A stretch of 64,000 nucleotides of DNA from Octopus sinensis (lineage: Eukaryota), in the NCBI RefSeq assembly GCF_006345805.1, contig NC_043001.1:50468001-50532000 (forward strand), read 5' to 3'. The notes below the pieces were generated by a model. That model worked only from the letters and a program-made list of their open reading frames with translations. It ran no database searches and had not been told where the DNA came from. A program made the translations under genes and the position numbers. This document shows, piece after piece, positions 5,301-64,000 of this stretch (positions are counted from its first letter, which is position 1; every line of letters begins with the position of its first letter).

Positions 5301-5364
5301 AAGCTTGCTTCCAATCCGATTTCAAGCCACTCACATTTACTCGTCCTAAATTAAGTGAGTACAT
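2332..5364 (-). pseudogene. LINE ORF2 remnant (AP endonuclease, reverse transcriptase, C-terminal zinc-binding region)
   Basis: APE: RVNVSGLK, LDVIVLTETRL, VLGDFN. RT: NFRPITLLNAELKILAKVLA, LDQSKAFDRVDH, SVRQGC, YADDV. C-terminal CPRLGQSNETVLHAIVQC. Multiple frameshifts. Confidence 0.9.
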
Positions 5365-5451
5365 GAATGGGGCTTACGTTTAAAGTTGTTCCAGCTGGGA
5401 AGTAGGTCCTTCCTCGACCGTTTCAGCTGTGGCTGGTGGATTATTTATCAG

Positions 5452-8841: not shown

Positions 8842-9237
8842 CTCTTTTACTTGTTTCAGTCATTTGACTGCGGACATGCTGGAGCACCGCCTTTAATCGA
8901 GCAAATCGACCCCGGGACTTATTCTTTTGTAAGCCCAGTACTTATTCTATCGGTCTCTTTTGCCGAACCGCTAAGTAACGGGGACATAAACACACCAGCA
9001 TCGGTTGTCAAGCAATGCTAGGGGGACAAACACAGACACACAAACACACACACGCATATATATATACATATATACGACGGGCTTCTTTCAGTTTCGGTCT
9101 ACCAAATCCACTCACAAGGCTTTGGTCGGCCCGAGTCTATAGTAGAAGACACTTGCCCAAGGTGCCACGCAGTGAGACTGAAGCTGGAACCATGTGGTTG
9201 GTAAACAAGCTACTAACGACACAGCCACTTCTGCGCC
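8842..9237 (-). mobile_element. tRNA-derived SINE with an internal microsatellite (abundant family in this window)
   Basis: Head (revcomp) ggcgcag..gtggctgtg...ttggtttccagcttcagtctcactgcgtggcacc; tail ctcttttacttgtttcagtcatttgactgcgg. Family recurs many times. Confidence 0.75.
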
Positions 9238-9262
9238 TATATATATATATATATATATATAT

Positions 9263-10222
9263 ATGGTTATCCGTAATAATGAAGGGTGAAATTAATTAAT
9301 TTGGAATAATTATCAATTACACCAAGTAGTCTTCGGCATGTAAAAGCCTCATTCGAGGAAAATTTAAGTAATACTAAGCAATAAAGGGTTTAGCAACGAA
9401 TTGCCTTACCACATACCGAATTTAGAAATAGCAGTCAAAGGGTTATAGCTATTTCTTCTACTAAAAAGGGAGATCTCAGTAAAAACAGCATTTGGAAGGC
9501 AGATACAAACAGGTAAGAGAGAATGAATTGACTGCAATCTATCATACATTTTTAAGTTATCTACGGACGTACGTTTCGAAATCAAGTTTTTAGGAAAGCA
9601 TAAGAATTAAATATTAAATATTAAATAATTCTATCTTACCGAAACTTCTTTTCTCTTCAGCGTAGAATACTATAATCATAAATGATTATATATTGAATTT
9701 TGAGATACCAGAAGGCAACAACTCAACTCAGTATCAGAGCGAGCTAGAATCCGCAACTGGTATCACCGAATTCAATTTGTGAATGAAACGATTGTGTCAA
9801 CAGCCCCTTCCCACCCGCGTGTAGCCAAAACAAGATGCTGTGGTCATCTACTGAGATAAAATATGGTTATCCGTAATAATTAAGGGTGAAATTAATTAAT
9901 TTGGAATAATTATCAATTACACCAAGTAGTCTTCGGCATGTAAAAGCCTCATTCGAGGAAAATTTAAGTAATACTAAGCAATAAAGGGTTTAGCAACGAA
10001 TTGCCTTACCACATACCGAATTTAGAAATAGCAGTCAAAGGGTTATAGCTATTTCTTCTACTAAAAAGGGAGATCTCAGTAAAAACAGCATTTGGAAGGC
10101 AGACACAAACAGGTAAGAGAGAATGAATTGACTGCAATCTATCATACATTTTTAAGTTATCTACGGACGTACGTTTCGAAATCAAGTTTTTAGGAAAGCA
10201 TAAGAATTAAATATTAAATATT
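9263..10222 (-). mobile_element. 1.6 tandem copies of a 600-bp non-coding unit with a hammerhead ribozyme (retrozyme-like or PLE pseudo-LTR-like)
   Basis: 9261-9622 repeats at 9861-10222 with an offset of exactly 600 and 2 mismatches. (TA)n on both sides. Confidence 0.75.
9561..9665 (-). ncRNA. Type I hammerhead ribozyme motif
   Basis: CTACG-CTGAAGA-GAAA(AG)AAGTTT...AAACTT(GA)TTTC-GAAA-CGTACG-TC^CGTAG. 5-bp stem I, intact core, G10.1-C11.1 pair, palindromic minimal stem III, GUC triplet. Confidence 0.85.
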
Positions 10223-10488: not shown

Positions 10489-10833
10489 GGCTCAGTCCTG
10501 GCCCTATGCTGAGAAGCTTGCTTCTCAACCACATTTTTCCGGGTTCAGTCTCACTGTGTGGCACCTTGGGCCAGTGTCTTCTACTATAACGTTGGGCCGA
10601 CCAAAGCCCTGTGAGTGGATTTGGTAGACGGAAACTGAAAAAAAGGCCGTTAGAGCTTTACGTACATCAGGGCTTAAGTCGCCAGTTATTTCAGTTTAGT
10701 TCATTCAGATTCGTTTAACACTCACTGCTGACATTCTTTTGTTCTTCTTTTCCCACCGGAAGTCTCTTCCTAGCTAGCCCGCAGCGAAGTTCCTGTCTAC
10801 AGTTCGTCTGTCATGTATCCTGTCCTACACCGT

Positions 10834-17678: not shown

Positions 17679-17737
<59 letters not shown>

Positions 17738-17739
<2 letters not shown>

Positions 17740-17857
17740 TGCAGGAGTTCCAGGTTCAGTCCCACTGCGTGGTATCTTGGGCAAGTGTCTTTTGCTATAG
17801 CCTCGGACCGACCAATGCCTTGTGAGTAGACGGAAACTGAAAGAAGCCTGTCGTATT

Positions 17858-17899
<42 letters not shown>

Positions 17900-18541: not shown

Positions 18542-19810
18542 CAGGGGTTAGACAAAATCATGGAAACACATAGCATCATAGTAACCTAATTTTGAAATAT
18601 CTATAAAACCGTCAAAAGCTTGTTTATTTTTATGTTTTTTTGATTTATTATTAGTGTTGCTTAACATGTTTTATAAAATTGCTGTTTCTTTTCAGATATC
18701 ATCAGAAAAAGGTAATAAAAATTTAGTAAAATGACAGACCTATCAGGCTGTCAAAGGTCAAATTATTGGTGCTCATATGGCAGGCGCCAGCGTAACGAAA
18801 ACAGCCGAAACGTTCGGTGTATCAAGAAGTACTGTCTGGAAAGTAATGAAAGCCTTTGAGAAAGAGTGAAAAACCTCCCCATCGAAACCAAACTCCGGAA
18901 GAAAACCAAAACTTTCAGATAGGGACCGCCAGACTCTTACGCAAGTTGTTAGGAAGGATCACAAAAGTACAGCTCCCAAAATTACTACAAAGCTTAATGA
19001 CCTCCTCGAGAGCCCAGTTTCCACAAAACTGTTCGCCGGGAGCTGCACAAAGTCTGATTTCACGGGAGGCTGCAATCAGAAAACCACTTCTTCCAAGAAC
19101 AAACGTTGCAAAGCATTTAGAACGGAGTAAAACCTACAGAATTAGTCCCTAGAGCAGTGGAAGAATGTTATTTTCTTGCACGGGTCATCCTTTACCCTAT
19201 TTCCGACCACCGGCTGAGTATACGTGTAGAGACAGCCAAAAGAAGAATTTGACCCAGACTACCTTCTTCCAACTGTTAAACATGGAGGAAGATTTGTGAT
19301 GATCTGGAGGGGTTTTATCTTGGAAATCCGCCAGCCCAATGGTTTCCCTTCATGGCAGAATTAATAGTCAAGACTATTTAAGCATTTTATCTGATAAAAT
19401 TCATCCTATGGTTGTGGAACTGTTTCCGGAGGGAAATGCAATCTTTCAGGATGATAATGCACCAATTCACACAGCTAAAGTTGTTACTGAATGGCACAAA
19501 GAACATTCTAATGAAGTTGAACATCTTATCTGGACAGCACAGTCCCCAGATCTCAATACTATTGAACATTTATGGTGCATTTTAGAAAAACAAATAAAGA
19601 GTCGATATCCTCCACCATTATCACTACAAGAATTGGAGACTGTTTTAGCTGAAGAATGGACAAAAATTCCTTTGGAAACAATTCAAATTTTGTACGAGTC
19701 CATACGTCGTAGAATTCAAGTTGTAATTACTGCCAAAGGCGGTCCTGCCCCATATTAAAATATATTTGTTTGAAATTTTAAGGCGTTTCCATTATTTTGT
19801 CCAACCCCTG
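18542..19810 (+). mobile_element. Full-length Tc1 (DD34E) transposon, transposase disrupted (ATG 18731 to stop 19758)
   Basis: TIRs caggggtt(a/g)gacaaaat(c/a)atggaaac, TA TSD on both sides. Motifs FQDDNAPIH and SPDLNTIEHLW. Frameshifts and stops. Confidence 0.93.
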
Positions 19811-28873: not shown

Positions 28874-29245
28874 CTCTTTTACTTGTTTCAGTCACTTGAC
28901 TGCGGCCATACTGGAGCATCGCCTTTAGTCGAGCAAATCGACCCCACGACTTATTCTTTGTATGCCTAGTACCTATTCTATCGGCCTCTTTTGCCGAACC
29001 GCTAAGTTACGGGGACGTAAACACACCAGCATCGGTTGTCAAGTGATGTTGTGGAGACAAACACAGACACACAAACATATACACACACATGCATATATAT
29101 ATATACATATATACGACGGGCTTCTTTCAGTTTCCGTCTACCAAATCCACTCACAAGGCTTTGGTCGGTCCGAGGCTATAGTAGACGTGCCACGTAGTGG
29201 GACTGAACCCGTGACCATGTGGTTGGTAAGCAAGCTACTTACCAC
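28874..29245 (-). mobile_element. SINE (same family as 8842)
   Basis: Same head and tail blocks. Confidence 0.7.
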
Positions 29246-37306: not shown

Positions 37307-37408
37307 TCAGTGGTTTGTTGTATCATAGCTAGCATCTAAGTAGATACCAGTGACATCTTCAACAATAGAACGGTCTGGAATAGTCTGGGACATGCCATAG
37401 AGTGCACC
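37307..37408 (-). CDS. SGPL1: SGPL1 E13 (last coding exon), 102 nt: [33 protein letters not shown]
   Basis: tttag acceptor, TGA stop. Confidence 0.93.
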   Translation of the reverse strand, partial: GALYGMSQTIPDRSIVEDVTGIYLDASYDTTNH

Positions 37409-40400: not shown

Positions 40401-43400
40401 GCATATTGTCAAAGGTCTCTGTCACTAGTCACCACCTATGTGAGGTCCATCAATTTTAAAACAAATGATATGGACGCCCATGTGTAACAAGATTTTCAGG
40501 AACATAGCCCTTCCGTAATCTGGGAATGACTGTTAGCTGTTTGAAATGTCAGCCTCAAAGAATTATATATATAGTATGTGGCTGTGTCACTGAGATGTTT
40601 TCTTCCAAACCACATGGTTTCAGGTTCATTCCCACTGCGAAGCACCTTGGAAAAGTGTCTTCTACTATAACCCTGGGCTGACCAATGCCTTGTGAGTGGA
40701 TTCTGCTGAGGTCGACTTTGCTGTTCATCCTGTCAGGGTTGATAACATAAGTACCACTCAAATACTGGGGTCAATACAACTGACTCACCCCTTCCCAGAA
40801 TCTGCTGGCCTTGTGTCAAAATTTGAAACCAATATTAGGTCAATGTAAATACTCAAACTAAGGCACCAAGCTGGTAGAATTGTTACTGCACTAGGCAAAA
40901 TGTTTAGTGGAATTTCACTTGCCATTACATTCAGAGTTCAAATGCCACTGGGGTCAACTTCGCCTTTCATCACTTCAAGGTCAATAAAATAAACACTAGT
41001 TGCTGGGTCGATGTAATCAACCAAACTTGCTGACCATGCACCAAAATTTGAAGCCAATACAAAAATATTCAAACTTACCTAGCAGGAAACTGCAGTGGAT
41101 TCAGAGTCCAACCTTTTGCAGTAAGTGCATCAGACAGACGATAGATATCAAACTCCTTTGAAGTAAAAGCAATAACAGACATCTTAGGATCACCTAGTAC
41201 CTCAATACTATGGATGTTTTTCAGACTGAAATAGAAATCAGTAAGGTTTTAGGTTAACTAAAGTTCTGGTAAGTTTCCATTTATAACTAGTTCATTTCTA
41301 TGATAGTTATAGAACTGGTTGATATAAGAACAATGCAGAGCAGAAACTCTGAAGAATAATAAAATGAAAAAGGAAAAAAAGAAGGAAAAACTGAAAGAAA
41401 ATGGTTAAGTGTCAAGAATAATAATTATTTGTGCTATTATTAGTAATTATTTAGAATCTCTGAACAGAAGGATCTTTCTGCTAAAGGGCAGTTTTATCCT
41501 TATCTTTCAGCCAAAGAAGCCATGCACCAACAGACAGTAGAGCTTGGTGCAGTCTTCTGACTTTCCAGCTCCTGATAAACCAGCCAACCTAAGCTAGCAT
41601 AAAAGTAAGATGTTAACTGATGATGATAATGATGATGATGACTTTCACCAATATGATTTTATATTCACCATCATCATTTAACATCCATGCTCCATGCTGG
41701 CAATAATTCTGAAAATTTAGTGTCAGGTTGCTCTCAAGCACAACTGGTAACATGTAACTCAGTACAACCTGTCACATGTTTGGATCATTGGTAACTAAGC
41801 CAGTAACCCCACCAGGCTTGCTTGGTGAGGAGTGTGATTTATTGGACATCCTGCAGGAACAATAAACAAAACCCATCAAAGGGCAGAGGAACACAAGAGA
41901 GTCAACAACTATCCAACAATGTGAGATGGCACATGGCCTAATGGTTGGGACATTGCATTCATGATCTCAAGATCATCATCATCATCGTTTAACGTCCGTT
42001 TACCATGCTAGCATAGGTTGGACAGTTCAACCGGGTCTGGAAAGCCAGGAGGCTGCACCAGGCTCCAGTCTGATCTGGCAGTGTTTCTACAGCTGGATGC
42101 CCTTCCTAACGCCAACCACTCCGTGAGTGTAGTGGGTGTTTTTTACGTGCCACCAGCACAGGGTCAGAAGAGGCTGGAAAACGGCCATGATCGGTTGGGG
42201 CTTTTATGTGTTACCGACACGGACACCAGTCAGGCGGCGCTGGCATCTGCCATGTTCGGACAGTGCTTTTTTACGTGTCACCAAGACGGGTATCTTAACT
42301 ATAATTTCCATTTGATTTTTATTTTGATGTTGGTGTTGACATACTTGACTCAGTAGGTCTCCTCAAGAACAGCGGGTCATGGTCTTAATTCCCAGATTGG
42401 CTGTTCATTGTGTTCTTGAGAAAAACACTTGATTTCATGATGCTCCAATCCACTGTGCTGTAAATGGGTAATCTTGTGAAAGACTGGCATACAAAGGTGA
42501 GATGGTGACTCTGATAAATCACCTGAATGGTCGTCTCACAAGTCATGTTTCGTATTCAGCCATCAAAGAGATGAATAGTACAACCCGTACTATGAATCCT
42601 AACTGGCTGGGATTGGTTGTTCAAACACATTGAAGGATAAATAAATGAAAGTAAATGCTGCTAAAGACATCCAAGGGTGACGATTATTAAACCTGGTGAT
42701 TGATTAAGTCTCACAACCCAATACTCATTGATACTCACTTTGAATTCAAATTTAAATGTAATTCAATTGAACCATTAAAGAAAATTAAAGCATAAAATAT
42801 AAATGTTGTAATTACACTTTAGCCATAGCTCGTGCTGTAGAGATGATTTTCCAGGCAGCATCAACGTAACCTTCCATTCCAGTAAACATCATAGTTGCCC
42901 AACAAGAAGCAATTTCTGAGCCTGCTCGGCTACCTAGAGAAAAATTCAATAAGAGATGTTAAGTAAAGCATTCTACATAATAGATGATGGCTATGGTATG
43001 CCTACCCTTACAATTTGCATCTCCAGTCTGGAACACCCATCTTGTCCAGAATATTGATCTATAAGAAGTTAGCCAGAGATGTGTAACCAAATGAACACCC
43101 TCCATCTGTTACTTCCCATTTTTTGATATTTTGCCTTTCTGGACATTGACCATAGTAAAGCTTTGACATCTAACAGCTGATATGATAGAAATCCACAAGA
43201 TTATCCACCACCTTTCTAACAACAATCTTAGCCACTTATTTTGAAATAAATATGTTAACCAGCCATGGATATCATCATTATCATCATTATTTAATGTGCA
43301 TGCACTAACATCCTCTTGAAACAGGATTAAATTATTTTGTCCAAAAGCTTCTCTGCTTTCACATCTAGTCACCTGATTGATTTGTTACCACCATCCCACC

Positions 43401-46400
43401 CATGCAAGCACGGGAAGCTGGATGTTAAACGATGGTGATGATGATGATGTGTCTATGTGTTCGAGAAGCTTTGTTTTTTCTAAACACTGTATGGTACTAT
43501 GGGCAAGTATTTTCTATTACAGACTTTGTGAGTGAACTTGGTAGGCAAGAACTGAAAGAAACTCGTTGTATACATACGTGTGTGTGTGTGCGTGTGTGTG
43601 TGTATCTGTGTCCCCTTGTGTAGACATCATGTGGTGCTTGTAAATGAACACCATCATTTCCAGTCTTCTGAGAAAAATATACTTAACTATGGAAAAATAT
43701 TACATTGTTTGGAAAACGAGTTAAGGTTGGTGACAGGACGATCATCCAGCACTAGAAAATCTGCCTCAACGCCAACAAACACTGTCCGACCCATGAAAGT
43801 ATGAAAAAGTGGATGATGATGATGATGATGATGACGACGACATCGATGATGATGATGATGAGGAAGAAGAGGAGGATCTCTCAAAATTGTGTTTCCATTT
43901 GCCAACGCACTCCTAATGAGGTAGACTCATTACACAGTTGTTCAAACTGCTGGATATGGTGGAGGTGCGGTGATGGTGGGAAATGGAAAACAAAAGAAAA
44001 AATAGAAAGAGACAAAAACATCACAATACCTGCAAATGTGGGAGTAGCATATATTCCACCGGGCCAATTTGTAATGCTAAACCACTGGAATTTACGATAG
44101 TTGGGGTCTTTGTACATCAAAACAGCAGAGCCTTTAGGTGCTTGACCATACTGGAAACAACATTAAAACAATGATTTAATAACAAAAACATTTCAAAACA
44201 TAAAAAAAGAACTGAAAGCAAAAAGCAACAAACTAAAATATTTATGAGACTCTCGAAGGCTCAATCTGAAAATTAATGACAGAACAAAAACAACATTAGC
44301 ATCTGTCACAGCCACAGCTGGTTGAAGCTGTCTAATTTATTAGTTCCCAATACTGAGAGATAAATATATATAGAAATGTTCGTTTAAATGATGCTTAATT
44401 TTATGAAAGAAAGATAAACAATAAAACTTTACCTTGTGTGTGTCTGCTGAAATACTTGTTACACCGGGGAGACGGAAATCAACTGGGTCCATATGGAAAC
44501 CAGCTTTCTCCAGAAATGGAACGAGGAAACCACCCAAACAACAATCACAGTGAACTGGAATGTTGTACTTTAAACCAAGCTGGAGGAATTATTTTGAAAA
44601 TAAAACAGAAGAGAAAACATATTTATTAAAAAATATAAACAAACATGTTAATTAGGAAAAGGTATTTAAGACTTTTAAATTTTATTAATAAATAATTTCC
44701 AACAGGGGCATAAGGCAACACATTTTTGGGGAGAGCACAACTGATTTAGTTGTCCTATGTGTGTCTTCTAGGATCTCGAGCATCCTCCATCTGATTGCGT
44801 TCAAATTTGATATGTAGATACCAATAGTATCAGGGCGTGTATAAGCCTTGAAAATGATACCAAGTAAATAGAAACTGTGTGGAAGACTGTCTAATGGACT
44901 TTACCTATAAACCAAAAGTTCACTTCTGTGATTTATGATATGCTGATTTGGCTGACAATTTATGTTTTGGATACACATGTAGTGGATCTTGCATGCATGA
45001 AGTGGATTCGATCCACCATAACCAAATTTAAATTAACACTGTAACAGAACTTTTCCCACGGTAGAACAATGGTTTTTCTCTGACAGCAGTTTTACATTTT
45101 CCAGATGCCTTTAGCTAGGGCAAAATAATGTCTTCACCACTTGACCCTTTCTAACCTCTTCTACTTCACCAATAGCTAGAATAGAGATAACAAAACCACC
45201 AACTAAATCTATTGTTCTCAATGATATATCTATCCTTCTGGATAGTTATAAAAGCAAGAACACCCCAAGCAAAAATCAGTCAGTGACAACTCAACGAGTC
45301 CAGTCACATGGTGACAACTTAACCAAGTAGTCACTTGGCAACAACTGAGCGAGGCAGCTCGTGACGACTCAATTAGTTAGGGAACAAACTGCTAGAATCA
45401 TGATAACAAGGAATGCAGCTACTAAAGACAATGGTCAGCAAGAGAAATGAAGTTTACTGTCAGCAACTGTGAGACAACACCCTACAACTCTCACTAGCTC
45501 TAATTCTGTTCTCTTACAACATCATTCTATCGCTATCTGTGGTTTACTACTAACAATTTGCGTACGCCAAACTATACAAAGAAAAATTCTACCACATCTA
45601 ACTTTCTTTCACATGCTCTCGGATGTTATAACCTGCCCGTCGAGGTAAGGTATTTTTCAACATAACGGTAAATAAATACTTTCTTAAAACTTCATGCATT
45701 GTTCATCTTTCACATCCTACAGTAAGCAATTATAACAACAAATTTTTATCATTACAACTGTTGACTCCGACATTTCATAATATTGTGTACCTAATCATAT
45801 TTATCGTTACACACATGTCTGTAGGATATCCAACCACTTGCATATTAATTTAATAAGTCAAATATTCAATTCATCAAACAACTGAAATTGTCAAAACCAA
45901 CAGACAACCCAATCCATCAATTCAAACTTAATAAAAGCCTTTATATTATGTAACTATGCCAAACACAAAACACAGCTCTCTTCAATCTACCTACTTAGCA
46001 AATAGGTTCTATGTCTACTCTACAGTTGAGTAAGATAACTATAACAGGTTAAGTAGCAGCTGTGAAAACAATTTCTCCATCAATATCTAAATATACACAA
46101 TTGCATAATTGTGTGTACAAGCATGATAAAATAAAAGTGTGTGTGCACACACACACACATGTGTTTTTGAGTAGACATGCTGACCAACTAATGAAATACT
46201 CATATCCTATTACAAGTGTTATGTCACATACCAGGATGGGACACTTAACTTTCAATGATTTCCATCATGAAAAATTGAAATAGCTGCACAGAATCAACAT
46301 ATTGGGTTGTCTGGAACGTTTGTGCCAGTTTACAGTAGCTTACCTTTCGACTTATTTTAGAACATGGTTGAGTCCATAAAATAGGATTTGACTACACCTC

Positions 46401-49400
46401 CATTTAGAGCACAGTTTAAGCTATCTTTTCAAGGAAGAAGGTTTATGTTCCAATAATCTGTGTTAATTCTGTAACCCTTTAAAATGGAAGATAAAGTTCA
46501 TTTTCAGCACTTGATGCTTTGGGAACCAGACAAAAATTGCTGTAGCTCAGCTGGGATGTGTTACCCCACCCTCCATATTCACCAGATATTGCTCCTTCGG
46601 ATTTCCACTTATTCAGGTCTCTACAGAATAGTCTTAATGGTAAAAATTTCAATTCCTTGGATGATGTAAAAAGATACCTTGATGAATTCTTTGCCATGAA
46701 ACTACCTCAATTCTGGGAAGAGGGTATTTTCAAGTTAAAGGAAAGATGGAGACGCATTGTGCAACAAAATGGTTCATATTTGGTTGATTAAAAATGTAAT
46801 AGCAAGTATTTATTGACTTTTTCTTTCCTTTAAAAATCGGCACGAACTTTCCAGACAACCCAATACATTTCAACACTGTAAACTAACCAAATGATAACTT
46901 ATTTTGTTTAGAAACAATATCTAATGCTTCTTGTAGCAAATCTTCAAATACATTTTAGCCTTCTTATTTAAGATAGCCTTAAGACAAGTTTATTTATTAA
47001 TTTTTAAATCACATAAATTACAGCAAAATATGATATCAGTCACACTTACCTCGGAAATTTCTGCTATTGGATCAATAATACCATGGGGAAACTGTGGGGC
47101 AGAACCAACTAACTGTAAAAGATAGAATTTTAAAATGAGGTTCATTTTCTAAAAACTTAACCTTAGTAAAAAAAGGGAACCTCTATGTGAGGCCCTAAGA
47201 ATTTTAAAATGAGATTCTTTTTCTAAAGACTTAACCTTAGTAAAAAATGAGAACCTCTATGTGAGGCCCTAAGAATTTTAAAATGAGATTCTTTTTCTAA
47301 AGACTTAACCTTAGTAAAAAAAAGGAACCTCTATGTGAGGCCCTAAGAATTTCAAAATGAAATTCTTTTTCTAAAGACTTAACCTTAGTAAAAAAAAAAA
47401 AAAAGGAACCTCTATGTGAGACCCTAAACCTGTAAGAAACAGCTAAATCCCTTTTACTCTTGTAACCCTTTCGCATTAGTATTACTCAGTCAAATGTAAT
47501 GCTTATTTATTCATACTATTTTGAATTAATCATGCACTACCTTGTAACATCAAGATTTTGATGATGTGATTGTTTATTTCAAGAATGACATTGTAGGGTT
47601 GGTGTGAGAAGCCAGATCTAGCTTGTTTGAAAGTAAAATGGTAGAATATTTGGGCTGGATAGGGCAGGTTAAAATACAAGTAGGTTCAATTGTACTATAT
47701 CATCATTAAAATGGAAGGACACATTCAATAACAATGTCTGAGAAACACTGACTAAAATCTAGAGAGAGAGGTTATGCTGTAATACTTTTGGTCATAGATC
47801 TGGTCAGTCAAAGCTTACCTATACAACAACAGCTATAGCTAAATGAAAGAACCTCTGTGTGGTCATCAAACCTACAAGAAAAATCAACTAAATCTCTTTC
47901 AAATCATACTCTACCATGTTAAAAAAATGAAGGATTGTATTATGTAGTCCAAGGTAGACTAAGACCAAAAGACTAGATGGTCATGGCTGGAATGCCTTGG
48001 GTCATAAGTTTGCTCATTTGAAGTCATCTGGAACTAAACATCAAGAATCTAAAATGTTATTATATGCACATCAGAGTAAAGAGATTGTTTTCACACATGA
48101 ACATTTATTTACAAACTGAATGGTGCTTGCCATTATTTAAGACAAAATTACAAGTGCTCAAAGGTTATGAGTAAAAAAAAGGGTTACTGGCAATTCATGT
48201 CTTTTTTTTAAACACTTTAATTCTGCATTTCTTAAGTAGGTCACAGAGAAGTCAGGAACAGGAGCCAAATGTCGCCTGTGAAAGACTGGAATCCTATCCA
48301 GAGTGGGAAGACTTATCCCTCACCCACTTCTTGCTCATTGAAACCGAAGCTAAGCACCAGACATTGAATGGTCTTCATGTTCTTATGAGGTATTTAGATA
48401 TTTACAGCTTATCTGACATTGCATAGATTCCTAAACGAAAAGCTAAATCACTTTAAATCCAATCTACAATTTCCAAAAGTCCTTCTATGACTTAGCTTTG
48501 AACATCTTTAGTGTTTTAGCAGCAACGTTTTGCACCACAGTGTACTGTTAATACAAAAGGGGAGACTTGTTTCAAAGCTAAGCTTTGTAAGCCTCCTTCT
48601 TTACTCAGATGGCATTTTTACCTTTGTGGTTAAACCAGGAAGTTCTTTTACCACTGACACTTTCATCCACAGCATTGTGCAGCTGAACAAGAAACTGTTG
48701 AACAAAACAATCTCCACTCTGATTCAACATCCTCAGTTTGTTCAGGAAGGTCTTTGGAGGAGATGCTTGAGGACTCTACAGCCATGAGACCTTCCCTGAA
48801 TAGTGAACAGAGACGATCGATGGATGAATATAAAAATGGAATGTTAGAATCATACTTACAAGGCATGTGTTTTTATTGATGGCGCGTTTCATAGCATTAA
48901 CATCAACTTTCTTTGTAACAGGGTCTACTGGAATATGAGTAAGCCTCATTCGTAACACCATAGCAGCCTGTGAATGTATAATTAAAAGCAGTAACAATAT
49001 GAATGCTAACATAAGCAGAAAGCTCCATGAAGAGAGGAAACAGTCAGTTCTATGAAACATAGTACCCAGTATCCTTGAAGGATACTTATTTTATCGACTT
49101 TGATAGGATGAGAGTCATGAGATTTAACAAAAACAACAAAAATAATATTTAAAAAAGAAAATATTTTTTTACTGATCAGGATATGTTTGTATTTCAGAAC
49201 TTTATTTCATGCACAATTTCAACGTTTTTTATCCAGTTCAAGGCTTGTATGTTTGATCCTAACCAAAATACATACATACAGAATTCTCTAATCAGTAATG
49301 AACTACTAAAGTTATTAAAATATCAGATGAAATGCCTTGTAGTATTTATTCTGATTCCTTTCATTCTGAGTTCAAATCCCATTAGGATCAACTTTGCTTT

Positions 49401-50353
49401 TAAACCTTCTGGTGTCTACACATTCGTACACTTTGTTGGATATGTGTGTGTGAGAGAGAGAAAGAGAGAGAGAGAACCCTTGTCTAGACATCATGTTATA
49501 TTAAAATTAAGTTAAATAAATTTGGAGATAATTTAATATTAATTTTACTTGATTTTGTATGATTTATTTTAAAGAATTTTTCACTTTCAGAATTGCTCCA
49601 AAGACTGTTCACGCTGCTTTTGAAAAGGTGAATGAATTTAGGGCAGTGAACTGGTAGAATCACCAGAATGACAAACAAGATGCTTCAAAGTGTTCCTTCC
49701 AGCTCTTTGTGTTGTGTTCAAATCCTACCATGATCAGCTTGGGTAGTAGACTCAGTCTATCAACCAATTGAACATCACTCCCTGATCCCCTGAGTAACTT
49801 TAGCAGAGTTCATTCAGCTGTATGCATTCAGGTTCTATCTCAGTCTTATTCCCTCACTCACTCACTCACATCACTCTCAGAGGTCCTGAAAATGATCAAA
49901 GGCACAGTTCTGCCTCCTGCTTAAACAATAAAATAAAAAATGGACCATGGTAGGAAATGAACTCAAAACATATAGAGTTACTAAGTCCAATGTTCTTCTA
50001 ATTCTGGTATCTCAGCATGTTATTTACTTATTCCAGCAATGCAGTCAGTTATTCCATCATACTCAGAAGTAACTAGAAATTAACTTCATTTATCCCAGTA
50101 ATAACTTCTATCATGTATATACTCAGGATAAGATTAGACATACAAGGTCGCTATGGATGATAAGAACATTTAAAACTGTGCATGAAACGTAAGTTCAAAA
50201 GGCTTGGGTACATGGTTCAGAAGCTTGCTTCCCAACCACATGGCCTTGGGTTCAGTCCCGCTACATGACACCTTGGGTAAGTATTTTCTACTATAGTCTA
50301 AGGCTGATCAAAGCCTTGTGAGTGGATTTGGTAGATGGAAACCTGAAAGAAGT

Positions 50354-50393
<40 letters not shown>

Positions 50394-50691
50394 AGTGGCA
50401 TGCTAAGTAGCTTGCTTACCAACAATATGGTACCAGGTTCAGACCAACTGTGTGGCACCTTGGGCAAGTTTTTTCTACTATAGCCTCGGGCCGACCAAAG
50501 CCTCGTTAGTGGATTTGGTAGACAGAAACTGAAAGATGCCCATCGTATATGTGTGTGTGTGTGTATGAATGTATGTATATGTGTGTGTGTGTATAAATAT
50601 ATACACATATATTTATATATATATGTGTGTGTGTGTGTGAATGTATGTATATATGTGTGTGTGTATAAATATATACACATATATTTATATA

Positions 50692-50738
<47 letters not shown>

Positions 50739-53700
50739 ATATAAATGTATGTATGTATATATATAAATATGGATGGATGGATGAATATGCCTGTGTATGT
50801 CTTTGTGCTTGAGTTGTGTTAATCTCTAAGTACCACCACTTGACAACCAGCGTTAGCTTGATTACATCTCTGTAACTTAACAGTTCAGCAAAACACACTG
50901 ATAGAATAAGCACCAAGCTTAAGAATAAATACTGGAGTCAGTTTGTTTGATTAACCCTTTCGTTACTATATTTCTGACCAAAATACACCCCTTATGTGTT
51001 TCAATTAAATTCTAACATAATCATAAATTTAGTCTGGTTTCATTAAACAACTATAACTTTTTTATTTATCAATATATTAATTTGATTTTTGGAAGATAAT
51101 TTAATGAAATGTTCTCAACTAATTCTATACTATAATTTTTGTCACAAAGTGACTCTAATTGCAGGTAGATACAGGTAAATTCAACAAAATATAAAATTAT
51201 TAAAATTTTGTTCAAACATCGCTATAGAAAATGGGTTATTAGCTAATATTCAATTGGGTATACAACAAAATTTTATGATAGAATTTGTTATTCTAGGTAA
51301 CTTTCTGATACCCATAATAATATTTATGGCAAAATAGTCTTAATTTCATTTAAGGTTGTGGGAAACCACTAACTATCCTTTCTTTCGCTTTGTTTACATT
51401 TAGCATAATGGTTCGTTTCCACCGTAATGATTTCAAATAGGCTCATTTGAAAAAGTAAAAAGAAATAGTCTAAGGCTTTACTCTCCTGGGAAAGTCTGTG
51501 GCTTGGTCCAGTTTCTTCAGAAAAATCACCGAAAGAAACAGTTTTTAAATTTTCACTCCATTCAAGTGCCAATTCATTTTCTTTATCGCTGTCGGAGCTC
51601 TCGGATTCACTGTTTTCACTTTCGGAAAATGAAACATCAGATTCATTATCAAATACCACGTGCTTTTTTTTTTCAGTCATAGAGTTAGATTTATCAAGGT
51701 TTTCAGTAGAAAATCCTTCGAATTCTGACTCGCTGCTTGATATAATGAAATTCGTATCCATTTTTTGTCAGAATTACAAATTTTGAAAACACAATAGGAA
51801 CAAATTTCGGAAAAAAATCTCCCAAAATTCACGGAATTAAAATTACACTTCGATTGTTGTACAAAACTGTAGATGAACTGTTTACGAAGTATAATACGTG
51901 TTTTCACGAATGTACTAAAGAGATTTGCTCTGATATTCACATTTAAATATGAAGAGGTAAATACGGGCGGGTTTGGGCAGTTTGGTCACATTAACCAAAA
52001 TTTTTTTCGGGCAGCTTTGGGCGGTTTGGTGACGAAAGGGTTAAACTCTTCGAGGTGGTGCCCCAACATGGCCACAGTCCAATGATTGAAACAAGTAAAG
52101 GTAAAAAGTAAACCTGAGTAGGTGCTTGCACATTCAACCTAATTATGCATGGACATTAAACCATCAAAAAATATTAGTAAACCTATTTTCATCTTTTCAA
52201 GGTCAATAAGGTAAGTACAGTGTAATATCTGGAGATGAGTGAAATCAATTCATTCAACCCAAGTACATCACTGGTACTAATTTAATCAACCAATGAGAAG
52301 TGGAAGACAGTCTTCCACAAGATTTTAATTCAAAATGTAAAGGGAGGTAACTAAAGTTTATTTTGAAAATCTAATGTCCTTATCTATTATAATAAAAGTG
52401 AAATTGCTTGTCTATCTGGGACCCCTGAATCTCAGTCTACGTTTGATCTACATAGACATATTATACCTTTTTGGAACCAGGGATGACGCCAGGATTGAAA
52501 ATCTGTCCTTCATTTGGTTATTGAACATCCAGTATTGGGCTCTAATTTAAAAGGATTTGGGTTGCTACTTCTAGCAGGTAAAGATTGGCTGATTCACACC
52601 ATTTTGGTGGCATTTGTCAGATGACATCACACATCAAGTGGGGGATAAATGACATTTGCCTCGTCAATTTTATGTTGGGATAAGAATTTGGGTCAAATAA
52701 GCCAACAGCTGGAATTCAATTCGGGACTGGAACAATAGAATGACTGTATTACAGAATTAATCATCCATCCTTAACCTCTGATCAGACATCACCAGGGCAT
52801 ATAGTACTTATAGATGTATTATAGTCATGCTACTTAGCTCCCTTTAGTTTGGGGCTGCAAGCCCAATAATCCCTCCACAGGAGCTAGCTTAAAAGTCCGC
52901 ATCTTTATTATAAAGTAGCTTTTAAGCTTTTTTATAATAATGGTACAGTCTGATTTATCTAGTTTTAGCAATTAATGAAATAAAATGAGTGGTGGAGAGG
53001 AAAAAGGCCTTTGTCATTCTGGACATTATGGTTAAAATAAAAAGATACTTTTTAAAATTCATTTTTGGCAATTAAAATCGCACTAAATAACAAAATCATT
53101 TTTGAAAAACATGTAAAATATAGAAAATAAAATTTAACTTTTTTTTTTCTAAAAGAATTAGAATAGTCTCAAAAGTTAATTAAATTTAGGGGCGTCCAGA
53201 AAATACAAAATTCTGTTGTAGTTATTAAACATCATAAAAATAATCTTTAGGTCAGTGGCACTCACCTTATCAAAAGCAGCATGAGCAGTCTTTGGAGCAA
53301 TTCTGAAATTGAAAAATTTTAAAACATTCTAAGTCATGCAAAGTAAAATAGACTTAATATTAAATTATCTCCAAATCTATTTGAATCAATTTTAGAATTG
53401 CAATTATTTTTTATAGAAAGAGGATACAAATTTAAAATAAAAATTCAAGAATTTAACACTTTAAATGTCTACCTCAAACCTACACACTCATGATGCCTGA
53501 TTATATCCAGAATTACAAATCTGAATGTACAAGCCTACCAGCTGAACAAGATACCAATCTGTTGCAAGGTTGAATTTACTCAAGCAATATGAAATAAAGT
53601 GCCTTGAACAAAAACAAATGTCACCAGGTCTGAAAATCAGACACACAACCTAATGATTTGCCTAACAATCTAACAGCAAGGTCACACACTTTCATAACAC

Positions 53701-56700
53701 AAAGTAACAATTTTCAAAAAAAAAATTTGTTTATTGTATTTTTTCAATTGTTTATCAATCCATTTTTTCCGCTGATCCCAAAAATGAAATTATTTTGTGT
53801 ATCATCAACAGTTAAAAAAATATGTCGACTTTCAACGTTATTATATATTCGGTATTGTCATAATGTTCCGCTACTAAATGTATGTCTAATTTTTTCTTTC
53901 AGACCAATTACTACGTTCTGCTACTTTCAGGATGGCTACTAGAGTATGTAAAAATTCTCCAGATACATTTTGCTATGTGTGTGGCTATTATATTGGAAAA
54001 AAACAGGTATTACATAAGATCATGAAATGTGCCAAATTGTGGATAGCGTACAGACTCTATTTTGAAATGCCCATGGGTGACCAGGACAAACCATGGGACC
54101 CACATGTGTTATGTAGAAGCTGTTGATCTACTCTAGAAGGATGGTTAAGAGGTACAGGAAGGTCAATGCCTTTTGCCATACCAAGGGTATGGAGAGAGCC
54201 AAAGAACCATCACGATGACTGTTACTTTTGTATGATTGATGTGACTAAGTACAGAAAAGTAAAAGGAAGACAAGCTCTTCAGTATCCAGACATACCATCA
54301 TCTAGAGCACCTGTACCACATGATGACAGTTTACGAATACCACTACCACCAGAAAATATTTCATCTGAAGAGTCAACAAGTAGCAGCAGCCAAGAAATGG
54401 AGGAAGCTTTCGTACCAAGAATGACTTCGGAGCCTCACTTTCCAAATCAGAGTGAGCTAGATGATTTAATAAGGGATCTGGGTCTTATTAAGTCAGGAGC
54501 TGAACTTCTTTCATCAAGGTTGAAGGAATGGAATCTACTGGGGGAAGACTGCAAGACATCTGTGTACTGGAAACGCCATGAAGAATTTGAAATTTACTAT
54601 GAAAATATTAACGATCTGTGTTATTGTAACAATGTGATAGGATTGTTTACTGCTGTTGAACTCATACATGATTCTCCAGAATGGTGACTGTTTGTAGATA
54701 GCTCAACATGAAGTCTCAAAGCAGTGTTGCTCCACAATGGAAATAAATATCCTTCTTTGCCTCTTGCACACTCCATACAGAAGAAAGAAAATTACGATAA
54801 TGTCAAAGAACTTCTCAACAAAATAAATTATGCTGAGTTCAAGTGGGATGTTTGTGGTGATTTCAAGATGCTTCCCTTCTTGCTTGGATTGCAAGGGGGA
54901 TACACAAAGTATTCATGTTTCCTTTGCTTATGGGACAGCAGAGCTGATGATGATCATTACAAGAGAGTACATTGGCCCCCACGAGTAGAACTGCAGTCAG
55001 GAATGTCAAATGTTCTCAAATAGCCCCTAGTAGATTCCAACAAAATCTTATTACCCCCACTTCATATCAAACTCAGATAGATAAAACAGTTTGTGAAGGC
55101 CTTAGATTTTAGAGGAGAAGCTTTTCAAGAAATTTGTCTTATGTTTCCAAAGCTATCTGAGAATAAGATCAAGGGTGGCATATTTGTTGGGCCCCAAGTA
55201 AATGCAATGTTAAAGTCAAAGAAACCGGAAAGAGCACTGACAAAAGTTGAAAAAGAAGCTTGGTGTGCATTTCATGATGTAGTTCGTGGATTCCTAGGAA
55301 ATCACAAAGATCCTAATTACAAAGAGCTGGTAGCAAAGCTTACTGAAAACTTCAAGAAAATGGGTAGTCGTATGTCCTTAAAGGTTCATTTTTTACACTC
55401 TCACCTAGATTTTTTCCCTGAAAATTTGGGTGATGTCAGTGAGGAGCATGGTGAAAGATTTCATCAGGATGTCGCAACTATGGAAAGAAGATACCAAGGA
55501 CGATGGGATACTGCTATGATGGGAGATTATATACGGTCTCTAGTCAGAAAAGATGAAGGTATACACTCCAGAAAATCTCGATCGTCAAAGCACTTCTCAT
55601 CTTAAGAAAAGAGTTATCAAGGCATTTACAGTGCAGAGTTTTATTGCTTCATTTTCTTCTAGCTAATATCATACTTCTTAAATATCTTTCAATATATGAA
55701 AAAGTACTAAATGTTGTGTAATTATCCTTACAATACTAGAATAGATTGAACCAACAAAGTGCTAGAGAGAAAAGTTACAAATATAACGAGCAAATATGAA
55801 ATTAGGAATAAATATATAACTATCAATGTTAGGTCAAAACGAATGCGATTTTTGAATTTAGTGGCAAAAAATGCATATATGAACATTAAAAAATATAAAT
55901 AAACAAAACATGTGTTACATTGTGTAATTTAACAATGGTTATTCTGAATATCTAAATTTTGCAGGTAAATAAGAGTATTAGTTACTGGTTCAAAGTAGTC
56001 CATATATTGTTACATTTATTACGCCCACTTGTCTATAAGTATGAGAGACGACATAGCTTCTCACTGTACAAAACTGATATGTGAGGAGGGACTCAGCTAA
56101 GATGACATGTTTATAAATATATATATCATCATCATTGATGTCTCCTTTGCCTTGCTTGCATAGGTGAAAAAGAATTTGTTGAAGCAGAATTACAACAGCT
56201 GAACGCCCTTTCTGATGGCAACCCTCACCTGATTCCAAGCAAGGTAATGTTTTCTATGGCCAGGAGACTGGAAACGAACAACACATATATTTGTGTTTAT
56301 GTAAAAAGCACCGACTACACTCATGGAGTGGTTGGCATTAGGAAGGACATCCAGCTGTAGAAACACTGCCAGATCAGACTGGAGCCTGGTGCAGCCTCCT
56401 GACCTCCCAGACACCAGTCAAACCGTCCAACCCATGCTAGCATGGAAAACAGACGTTAAACGATGATGATGATGATATATATATATTCACACACACACAC
56501 ACAACGTATAAGGGGCTGGTGAAAAGTTCCTGGTAAAAGAAATACAGGAGGATCAGTTAATCATTATTTTATTCAACATATTTCCCTCTCAGATTCATAC
56601 ACTTATTGCAGTGATCCTTAAGTTGTTCTAAGCCCTGTAAAAGAATTTGGAAGGTTGAGCCAGGTCTTTCACGATACCCTTAAAACCAGGAACTTTTCAG

Positions 56701-61981: not shown

Positions 61982-62235
61982 CTGAAATTACACCAGAAAG
62001 TATAAAACAAACTAATATACAAGGAATTCAGGATTAATGATTCAAATTATAAAGAAATATAAAACCAATACTTTCAAAAAGATATTTGTCATATAAATAT
62101 GTATGTGTGTGTGAATAGGTGCAGGCATGGCTGTGTGGTAAGAAGCTTGCTTCTTCTCATTCACATAGTTCCGGGCTGACCAAAGTCTTGTGAGTGGATT
62201 TGGTAGATGGAAACTGTAAGAAGCCTGTCGTGTGT

Positions 62236-62280
<45 letters not shown>

Positions 62281-62284
<4 letters not shown>

Positions 62285-63688: not shown

Positions 63689-64000
63689 CTCTTTTACATG
63701 TTTCAGTCATTTGACTGTGGCCATGCTGGAGCACCACCTTTAATTGAGCAAATTGACCCCGGGACTTATTCTTTGTAAGTCCAGTACTTATTCTATCAGA
63801 CTCTTTTGCTGAACCGCTAAGTGACGGGGACGTAAACACACCAGCATCGGTTGTCAAGCAAGGCTAGGGGTACAAACACAGACACACAAACACATACATA
63901 CATATACATATATATACATATATACGACAGGCTTCTTTCAGTTTCCGTCTACCAAATCCACTCACAAGGCATTGGTCGGCCCAGGGCTATAGCAGAAGAC
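63689..64000 (-). mobile_element. SINE (same family as 8842), cut by the window end
   Basis: Tail and partial head blocks. Confidence 0.7.

What the first reader, a model, noticed from the sequence alone, without database searches (positions are those of the whole stretch)
49501..53394. Inverted duplicate of SGPL1 exon E5, with both splice sites, inside the following intron
Seen: 49591-49627 (+) is 34/37 identical to the 37-nt minus-strand exon E5 (53266-53302). It keeps tttcag and gtga(a)t, and ~90 nt of upstream intron also aligns but less well. It would encode [12 protein letters not shown] versus [12 protein letters not shown] (conservative changes). I found no other + strand SGPL1 exon copy. 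Inference: in the pre-mRNA this copy is antisense and ~3.6 kb downstream of E5, so it can pair with the exon and its 3' splice site as a ~130-bp duplex. That could act as an editing-complementary sequence for ADAR recoding (extensive in coleoid cephalopods), or as a splice silencer. Skipping 37 nt shifts the frame, giving a possible NMD switch on S1P lyase. Alternatives: a mutually exclusive exon pair with one member inverted (a real inversion or an assembly misorientation), or a relic of a local duplication.
Basis: partly seen in the sequence, partly recalled or inferred. Interest (0 to 1): 0.8.

Follow-up and report, generated by a model that had tools for sequence, protein, structure and literature searches.

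The report
Inverted exon copy in octopus SGPL1
An intron of the Octopus sinensis sphingosine-1-phosphate lyase gene holds a real, backwards-facing ~145-base copy of the preceding 37-base exon that could pair with that exon in the unspliced RNA, but its evolution looks like neutral decay of an old small duplication, not a maintained regulatory element.

Summary
Window + 49591-49627 matches the minus-strand 37-nt SGPL1 exon (53302-53266) at 34/37. The homology runs over about 145 nt: about 110 nt of upstream intron, the exon and 7 nt of the donor (83% over 138 nt, E 2e-34).

The window is Octopus sinensis. An independent O. vulgaris assembly has the same copy, at the same place and inverted. That rules out a misorientation and an ordinary alternative exon.

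Argonauta hians and Sepia pharaonis have one exon and no copy. O. bimaculoides lacks the 1.24-kb stretch that holds the copy, apparently through a deletion that also truncates a SINE.

Site patterns (17/3/3) place the duplication before the sinensis/bimaculoides split. The exon part of the copy has 3 changes against about 3.5 expected under neutrality. The changes since the sinensis/vulgaris split are not compensatory.

Thermodynamically the pre-mRNA can form a 118-bp duplex (-133.9 kcal/mol; shuffles -31.6±5.3). The duplex covers the exon and both its splice sites, and it persists in the fold of the 4.6-kb pre-mRNA segment that holds both arms.

Best reading: a neutral relic of a small inverted duplication. 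As a by-product it is a candidate ADAR or splicing substrate. No RNA evidence could be reached.

The parts
53266..53302 (-). Functional 37-nt SGPL1 exon ('E5' of the window). It encodes (I)[12 protein letters not shown] and starts in phase 2.
   Evidence: The exon model translates to a protein 100% identical to O. sinensis SGPL1. The peptide aligns with human SGPL1 VAPQSAHAAFNK in PDB entries 8AYF and 4Q6R. The exon is identical in O. vulgaris and O. bimaculoides.
53259..53408 (-). Arm A of the inverted repeat: about 106 nt of the 3' end of the upstream intron (polypyrimidine tract and AG), the exon, and the first 7 nt of the donor (GTGAGTG).
   Evidence: blastn. Alignment. Duplex prediction.
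49490..49634 (+). Arm B: the inverted duplicate of arm A. The exon-like part is 49591-49627, with acceptor tttcag and donor gtgaatg. It is antisense to SGPL1.
   Evidence: Present and inverted in O. vulgaris at L003 52250-52286 (-), with 1 difference in the 37 nt.
48968..53265 (-). The E5-E6 intron that holds the copy (4.3 kb). It also holds a tandem SINE pair (50219-50585), microsatellites, and an ORF that looks like a transposase fragment (51369-51761).
49017..50260 (.). A 1.24-kb stretch, containing the copy, that has no counterpart in the O. bimaculoides assembly.
   Evidence: In L002, 44772/44778 joins a truncated orthologous SINE directly to the sequence just upstream of E6.
48860..48967 (-). 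The next SGPL1 exon (E6).

Best explanation
This is a genuine small inverted duplication of about 145 nt: the 3' end of one intron, the 37-nt exon and 7 nt of its donor. It lies 3.6 kb downstream within the next intron.

It arose in the Octopus lineage after the split from Argonauta and before the O. sinensis/O. bimaculoides split. It survives in O. sinensis and O. vulgaris, was removed by a deletion in O. bimaculoides, and has been decaying at the neutral rate.

The copy still looks like an exon, with an open frame and both splice sites. The cause is that it has taken only about 3 hits in 37 nt, and that the real exon has not changed, which halves the divergence in the exon part. Selection on the copy is not needed.

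Because the copy is antisense in the pre-mRNA, it can form a long imperfect duplex with the exon, its 3' splice site and its 5' splice site. Any ADAR editing of the exon or interference with its splicing would be a by-product that the gene tolerates, not a selected switch.

Shown: presence, orientation, distribution among species, substitution pattern and thermodynamic pairing potential. Inferred: the timing, the loss in O. bimaculoides, neutrality, and any effect on the RNA.
For: Orientation is real:
- O. vulgaris has the copy inverted at the same position, within one 1752-nt alignment at 97.8% identity.
- The window contains no N.

Distribution among species:
- Argonauta hians has a single exon and a 712-nt intron.
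- Sepia pharaonis has a single exon.
- O. bimaculoides has no copy. A contiguous junction joins a truncated orthologous SINE to the sequence just upstream of E6.

Timing:
- The site patterns are sin=bim≠copy 17, sin=copy≠bim 3 and bim=copy≠sin 3.
- The copy is therefore no closer to the O. sinensis exon region than to the O. bimaculoides one, which makes it roughly 3 times older than that split.

Neutral rate:
- The exon part of the copy has 3 changes in 37 nt, against about 3.5 expected from the intron rates.
- Since the sinensis/vulgaris split there have been 2 changes in arm A and 1 in arm B, in different columns. One creates a mismatch, one falls in a column where the copy has a gap, and one turns an A-U pair into a G·U wobble.
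- The local rate is 15 mismatches in 1752 nt, which predicts about 1 change per arm.

Extent: only about 145 nt is duplicated, and the flanks are unique in the window.
Against: - Statistical power is low (about 140 columns). A twofold constraint on the copy cannot be excluded.
- The middle of the intron alignment contains indels.
- The O. bimaculoides assembly is built from short reads and has gaps (three runs of N in this intron), so the 'deletion' could be an assembly collapse.
- A 118-bp duplex with 29-bp and 23-bp perfect helices is the kind of substrate ADARs edit. Coleoids edit very heavily, so a real molecular effect is plausible and was not tested.
- The copy has persisted since before the split from O. 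bimaculoides, so it is at least tolerated.
Confidence: 0.65

Rival explanations
1. The copy is a selected cis element. It would act as an editing-site complementary sequence that directs ADAR recoding of the exon, or as a long-range splice silencer that hides the exon's splice sites and gives a frameshifted product degraded by NMD.
For: - The predicted duplex has 118 pairs at -133.9 kcal/mol, against -31.6±5.3 for shuffles. It is -130.1 kcal/mol in O. vulgaris.
- The duplex is retained in the minimum-energy fold of the 4.6-kb pre-mRNA segment, with 35 of 37 exon nucleotides paired.
- All 10 exon adenosines are A-U paired, and several sit in favourable contexts.
- Pairing of an exon with an intronic complement is the classic way editing sites are defined, and it is coupled to splicing (PMC1920255). 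Distant intronic duplexes can induce editing (PMC3479170).
- The pair meets a published criterion for potential dsRNA of at least 80% identity over at least 50 nt (bioRxiv 10.1101/2020.01.19.911685). It lies beyond the ±2-kb range that study searched.
Against: - The copy is absent from O. bimaculoides, Argonauta and Sepia.
- Its substitution rate is neutral and there are no compensatory changes.
- Recent changes weaken the pairing.
- No editing or skipping data were found.
- The arms are 3.6 kb apart. The upstream intron could therefore be removed, and the exon's donor recognised, before arm B is transcribed.
Confidence: 0.12
2. The copy is an ordinary alternative (mutually exclusive) exon that only appears inverted because of an assembly misorientation or a polymorphic inversion.
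For: The copy has an intact frame, an acceptor and a donor, and its two amino-acid changes are conservative.
Against: - Two independent assemblies, O. sinensis and O. vulgaris, agree on the orientation within gap-free collinear sequence.
- No sense-strand second copy exists in Argonauta, Sepia or O. bimaculoides.
- The annotated octopus proteins all carry the AHAAFDK form.
Confidence: 0.02
3. The copy is an exon of a + strand (antisense) transcript nested in the SGPL1 intron, using its intact + strand splice sites.
For: The acceptor and donor are intact on the + strand.
Against: - No + strand coding partner exons were recognised near it.
- No gene product covering it is on record.
- Its rate of change is neutral.
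Confidence: 0.04
4. Origin variant: the pair marks the ends of an ancient inversion of the intron segment 49635-53258, made by staggered breaks. Such breaks leave inverted duplications at the two breakpoints. The alternative origin is a stand-alone template-switch duplication.
For: - The two arms face each other, with their donor-side ends pointing inward.
- The homology ends abruptly 7 nt after the exon in both arms.
Against: - The intron order and orientation are the same in O. bimaculoides. This is uninformative if the event predates that split.
- Argonauta and Sepia introns are too diverged to polarise the event.
Confidence: 0.15

Closest known systems
Intronic editing-site complementary sequences (ECS), e.g. 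the GRIA2 (GluR-B) Q/R and R/G sites
   Same: An intronic stretch complementary to an exon pairs with it in the pre-mRNA. The duplex includes a splice site, so editing and splicing can interact (PMC1920255).
   Different: - Classical ECSs are short and close to the exon (tens to hundreds of nt). They are conserved among species, and editing has been demonstrated.
- Here the arm is a 145-nt copy of the exon 3.6 kb away. It is lineage-restricted, evolves neutrally, and has no editing data.
Distant intronic editing-inducer duplexes (Gabra-3 I/M site)
   Same: A long intronic double-stranded element in the same pre-mRNA could recruit ADAR to a coding exon (PMC3479170).
   Different: The Gabra-3 element is a self-contained hairpin 150 nt from an exonic hairpin, and it is conserved. 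Here the exon itself is one arm of the duplex.
Inverted repeat pairs (Alu or SINE) in introns
   Same: Two inverted copies a few kb apart in one pre-mRNA form long imperfect dsRNA. This is the main ADAR substrate in animals and mostly has no selected function (bioRxiv 10.1101/2020.01.19.911685).
   Different: The repeat unit here is not a transposon. It is a single-copy piece of the gene that includes a coding exon.
Small inverted duplications from replication template switching or staggered-break inversion
   Same: The copy is short and local, inverted, has abrupt ends, and carries no transposon hallmarks that could be detected.
   Different: The mechanism was not demonstrated here. This comparison rests on general knowledge, not on a test.
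Origin of plant MIRNA genes by inverted duplication of target-gene sequence
   Same: An inverted duplicate of a gene segment creates a fold-back RNA complementary to that gene (bioRxiv 10.1101/682591).
   Different: Those arms are adjacent and form a hairpin that is processed into small RNAs. Here the loop is 3.6 kb and lies inside the target's own intron, and there is no small-RNA evidence.

Membership tests
Editing-site complementary sequence (ECS) | Intronic sequence complementary to the exon, in the same transcript | tested here: met
   118 predicted pairs, with 35 of 37 exon nucleotides paired. The copy is antisense to the gene within the downstream intron.
Editing-site complementary sequence (ECS) | A-to-I editing observed in the paired exon | not testable with these tools
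   There is no read-level RNA data. The literature and supplement searches found nothing on SGPL1.
Editing-site complementary sequence (ECS) | Conservation or covariation of the pairing across species | tested here: not met
   The copy is present only in O. sinensis and O. vulgaris and is absent in O. bimaculoides, Argonauta and Sepia. The three changes since the sinensis/vulgaris split are not compensatory, and the rate is neutral.
Mutually exclusive exon pair | Both exon copies lie on the transcribed strand | tested here: not met
   The copy is inverted in two independent assemblies.
Mutually exclusive exon pair | Transcripts or proteins carry the variant exon | tested here: inconclusive
   The annotated proteins of O. 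sinensis and O. bimaculoides were confirmed to carry AHAAFDK. The protein searches returned no octopus transcript fragments at all.
Transposon-borne repeat (SINE or DNA element) | Multiple dispersed copies, or recognisable element features | tested here: not met
   Only two copies occur in the window and in 66 kb of the O. vulgaris locus. The flanks are unique. No tRNA or Rfam match reaches a gathering score.
Neutral relic of a local inverted duplication | Divergence of the copy equals the neutral rate, and it is lost in some lineages | tested here: met
   3 changes in 37 nt against about 3.5 expected. The intron part shows about 14% copy-specific differences. The stretch is deleted in O. bimaculoides. 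Statistical power is low.

The most novel reading that the evidence does not exclude
The inverted exon copy is a young, lineage-specific ECS born by duplication. In O. sinensis and O. vulgaris, but not in O. bimaculoides, it would drive ADAR recoding of a catalytic-site exon of S1P lyase, or frameshifting exon skipping. The exon includes the lysines and the His of AHAAFDK. That would make it a caught-in-the-act example of how cephalopod recoding sites, or an editing/NMD switch, originate.
Probability: 0.12. Interest if true: 0.65.

Novelty: new member of a known kind. Interest (0 to 1): 0.35.

Why it matters
If the duplex forms in vivo, this locus is a clean natural experiment on how an exon gains a double-stranded partner. 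Sister species carry the copy (O. sinensis, O. vulgaris) and a close relative lacks it (O. bimaculoides), with the exon identical in all three. Existing RNA-seq from those species could show directly whether a newly born inverted exon copy is enough to create editing or skipping of a coding exon. If it does nothing, this is simply a small decaying duplication. It would then be a reminder that intact splice sites and an open frame in a 37-nt copy are not evidence of function.

Tried and rejected
- Transcript evidence for the variant exon, for skipping or for recoding. A 99-aa query centred on the variant exon found no cephalopod protein. A 257-aa query returned no octopus fragments. Exact look-ups of the two ORFs that overlap the copy found nothing.
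- Literature. No paper links SGPL1 with cephalopod editing. The supplements of two cephalopod editing papers do not mention it. The Liscovitch-Brauer 2017 paper, tried as PMC5499236 (an id recalled from memory), is not held under that id.
- A transposon origin for the copy. The sequence just after the copy (49641-49760) looked tRNA-like by eye. ARAGORN found no tRNA and Rfam gave only sub-threshold microRNA hits on microsatellites. blastn found only weak scattered matches. The idea of a SINE or template-switch retrocopy was therefore dropped as unsupported.
- A larger duplication. The flanks of both arms have no other match in the window.
- A piggyBac identity for the ORF at 51369-51761. Pfam does not confirm it.
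- The O. vulgaris locus L003 never appeared in the script folder, so 5.2 kb of it was pasted in for the computations.
Full report
**1. The observation**

I read both sites. On the + strand, 49591-49627 is AATTGCTCCAAAGACTGTTCACGCTGCTTTTGAAAAG, preceded by ...ttttcactttcag and followed by gtgaatg. On the minus strand, 53302-53266 is AATTGCTCCAAAGACTGCTCATGCTGCTTTTGATAAG, preceded by ...ttttcaatttcag and followed by gtgagtg. That is 34 identities in 37.

A search allowing 3 mismatches finds exactly these two places. None turned up in 100 dinucleotide-preserving shuffles. A self-blastn of the window extends the inverted match to 49502-49634 against 53394-53259, at 83.3% over 138 columns and E 2e-34. 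In a multiple alignment the homology starts near 49490 / 53408 and stops abruptly 7 nt after the exon. The flanks of both arms have no other match in the window. The duplicated unit is therefore about 145 nt: about 106-110 nt of upstream intron, the exon, and 7 nt of the donor.

**2. The gene and the organism**

I used a human SGPL1 sequence recalled from memory only as a lead for tblastn, which placed exons on the minus strand. I then set the boundaries on canonical AG/GT sites.

The exons, from high to low coordinate, are:

| Exon | Window coordinates |
|---|---|
| 1 | 61981-61806 |
| 2 | 60387-60268 |
| 3 | 59610-59482 |
| 4 | 59031-58943 |
| 5 (the 37-nt exon) | 53302-53266 |
| 6 | 48967-48860 |
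| 7 | 47112-47050 |
| 8 | 44579-44433 |
| 9 | 44150-44030 |
| 10 | 42933-42816 |
| 11 | 41225-41079 |
| 12 | 39525-39405 |
| 13 (runs to the stop codon) | starts at 37408 |

The 491-residue translation is 100% identical to Octopus sinensis sphingosine-1-phosphate lyase 1 (XP_029636366.1, 552 aa). The window is therefore O. sinensis. About 61 N-terminal residues are encoded outside it, so 'E5' is a window-local name.

The exon peptide [12 protein letters not shown] aligns with VAPQSAHAAFNK of human SGPL1 in the solved structures 8AYF and 4Q6R. From general knowledge of this PLP-enzyme family, which I did not test here, the His in that motif stacks on the cofactor.

The copy lies in the E5-E6 intron (53265-48968). 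It is antisense to the gene, 3.64 kb downstream of E5 and about 620 nt upstream of E6. Skipping a 37-nt exon shifts the frame.

**3. Is the orientation real?**

The window has no N. The O. vulgaris locus comes from an independent chromosome-level assembly, GCA_951406725.2. It has the exon at L003 48092-48128 (+) and the copy at 52250-52286 (-), with one difference from the O. sinensis copy, CAT instead of CAC.

The whole region from the SINE pair through the copy to E6 aligns between the two species as one collinear block of 1752 nt at 97.8% identity. A misorientation is therefore excluded, and so is the idea that this is an ordinary alternative exon.

**4. Distribution among cephalopods**

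- Argonauta hians (L001) has a single exon and an E5-E6 intron of only 712 nt, with no copy on either strand.
- Sepia pharaonis (L004) has a single exon and a 4.3-kb intron without a copy.
- O. bimaculoides (L002) has the exon, identical in sequence, but no copy in the assembled sequence. Its intron contains three runs of N.

The key junction in O. bimaculoides lies in contiguous sequence. The ortholog of the second SINE of the tandem pair breaks off after ...GGTGTCATGTAG and is joined directly to the sequence just upstream of E6. In O. sinensis the SINE continues for about 60 more nt, a part shared with many other copies of the family, and is followed by 1.2 kb that includes the copy.

A truncated element next to missing sequence points to a deletion in O. 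bimaculoides (window 50260-49017 missing), not to an insertion in O. sinensis. An assembly collapse cannot be ruled out.

**5. Age and mode of evolution**

I counted site patterns over 137 gap-free aligned columns of the O. sinensis exon region, the O. bimaculoides exon region and the copy:

| Pattern | Columns |
|---|---|
| sinensis = bimaculoides ≠ copy | 17 |
| sinensis = copy ≠ bimaculoides | 3 |
| bimaculoides = copy ≠ sinensis | 3 |
| all three differ | 2 |

The copy is no closer to the O. sinensis exon region than to the O. bimaculoides one. The duplication therefore predates that split. A simple clock puts it at roughly three times that age. This fits the deletion reading for O. bimaculoides.

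From the intron columns, the rate on the copy lineage is about 0.09-0.10 per site. That predicts about 3.5 changes in the 37-nt exon part, and 3 are seen (2 in O. vulgaris).

The exon part is more similar (92%) than the intron part (about 80%). This is what one expects if only the real exon is constrained, since all three differences are derived in the copy. No selection on the copy is needed.

Since the sinensis/vulgaris split there have been two changes in arm A and one in arm B, in different columns. One turns a C-G pair into a mismatch, one falls in a column where the copy has a gap, and one turns an A-U pair into a G·U wobble. None is compensatory. The local substitution rate of 15 mismatches in 1752 nt predicts about one change per arm, as observed. 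Statistical power is low, and a modest constraint cannot be excluded.

**6. Pairing potential**

| Measure | Result |
|---|---|
| Duplex energy, O. sinensis | -133.9 kcal/mol |
| Energy with arm B shuffled | -31.6 ± 5.3 kcal/mol (lowest -49.5) |
| Gain over the two arms folded alone | about -87 kcal/mol |
| Pairs in the duplex | 118, of which 6 are G·U |
| Longest uninterrupted helices | 29, 23 and 15 bp |
| Region covered on arm A | 53395-53258: polypyrimidine tract, AG, whole exon, GUGAGU donor |
| Duplex energy, O. vulgaris | -130.1 kcal/mol |

In the minimum-energy fold of the 4.6-kb pre-mRNA segment from upstream of E5 to E6, the same duplex is kept, with 118 pairs and 35 of 37 exon nucleotides paired to the copy.

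All ten exon adenosines are A-U paired. Those in the two AAG lysine codons and the UAA context have the neighbours ADARs prefer (for the contexts; the preference itself is general knowledge). The three exon differences give a C·A mismatch, a U·U mismatch and a U·G wobble.

The pair satisfies a published operational criterion for potential dsRNA: a reverse-complement alignment of at least 80% identity over at least 50 nt. About 1% of random transcribed adenosines meet it. However, the pair lies outside the ±2-kb range used in that study (bioRxiv 10.1101/2020.01.19.911685).

Pairing of an exon with an intronic complement is how classical editing sites are defined, and it is coupled to splicing (PMC1920255). 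Distant intronic duplexes can induce editing (PMC3479170).

**7. What could not be tested**

I could reach no RNA-level evidence. The protein searches returned no octopus transcript fragments. Exact look-ups of ORFs overlapping the copy were empty. Neither the literature nor the supplements I could open mention SGPL1 editing in cephalopods.

**8. Verdict**

The functional interpretation is possible but has no support from comparative data. The copy is lineage-restricted, apparently dispensable in O. bimaculoides, and evolves as neutral sequence.

I read it as a relic of a small inverted duplication (confidence about 0.65). It incidentally gives the pre-mRNA a long exon-containing duplex. I put a selected editing or splicing role at about 0.12.

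The mechanism of origin is open. Template switching and a staggered-break inversion of the intervening segment are both possible. I found no transposon signature.

The locus is still a neat natural experiment, with copy-bearing and copy-lacking sister species and an identical exon, and existing RNA-seq could settle it.

Noticed in passing
window 50219-50585 (with relatives at about 9030-9265, 10506-10643, 29067-29244, 17687-17888, 40593-40702, 62174-62281 and 63882-63997): A tandem pair of SINE-like repeats of about 180 nt, each preceded by a (TA)n or (CA)n microsatellite. It belongs to a family with many copies in both orientations across the window and in the O. bimaculoides locus. These copies could form many other intronic inverted-repeat duplexes in the SGPL1 pre-mRNA.
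   Followed up: partly
window 51369-51761 (-): A 130-codon ORF in the E5-E6 intron ([16 protein letters not shown]...[15 protein letters not shown]). To my eye its end resembles the start of piggyBac-type transposases. Pfam gave no significant hit. The ORF is also present in O. vulgaris.
   Followed up: partly
window 53890-55602 (+): A chain of four long open frames (78, 186, 103 and 174 codons) on the + strand in the E4-E5 intron. Together they read like one gene of about 570 codons broken by a few stops or frameshifts. None has a Pfam match. It may be an uncharacterised transposon-derived gene.
   Followed up: partly
window 19303-19755 (+): A fragment of a Tc1/mariner-type transposase (Pfam DDE_3, E 3.4e-10). 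The first 37 kb of the window otherwise looks dominated by transposon-derived ORFs, for example frames that look like reverse transcriptase at about 3087-5373 (-).
   Followed up: partly
L002 (O. bimaculoides) 44464-44653: About 190 nt after an assembly gap in the O. bimaculoides E5-E6 intron have no counterpart in the O. sinensis intron. Together with the 1.24-kb missing stretch, this shows that the intron is being remodelled quickly between close species.
   Followed up: no
window 53291 (AAG lysine codon of the exon); L001 17340-17376; L004 23369-23404: The first lysine of the exon peptide (IAPKT) is Arg in Argonauta (AGG) and Ile in Sepia. An A-to-I change at the second A of the octopus AAG codon would mimic the Argonauta residue. 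This is only an observation.
   Followed up: no
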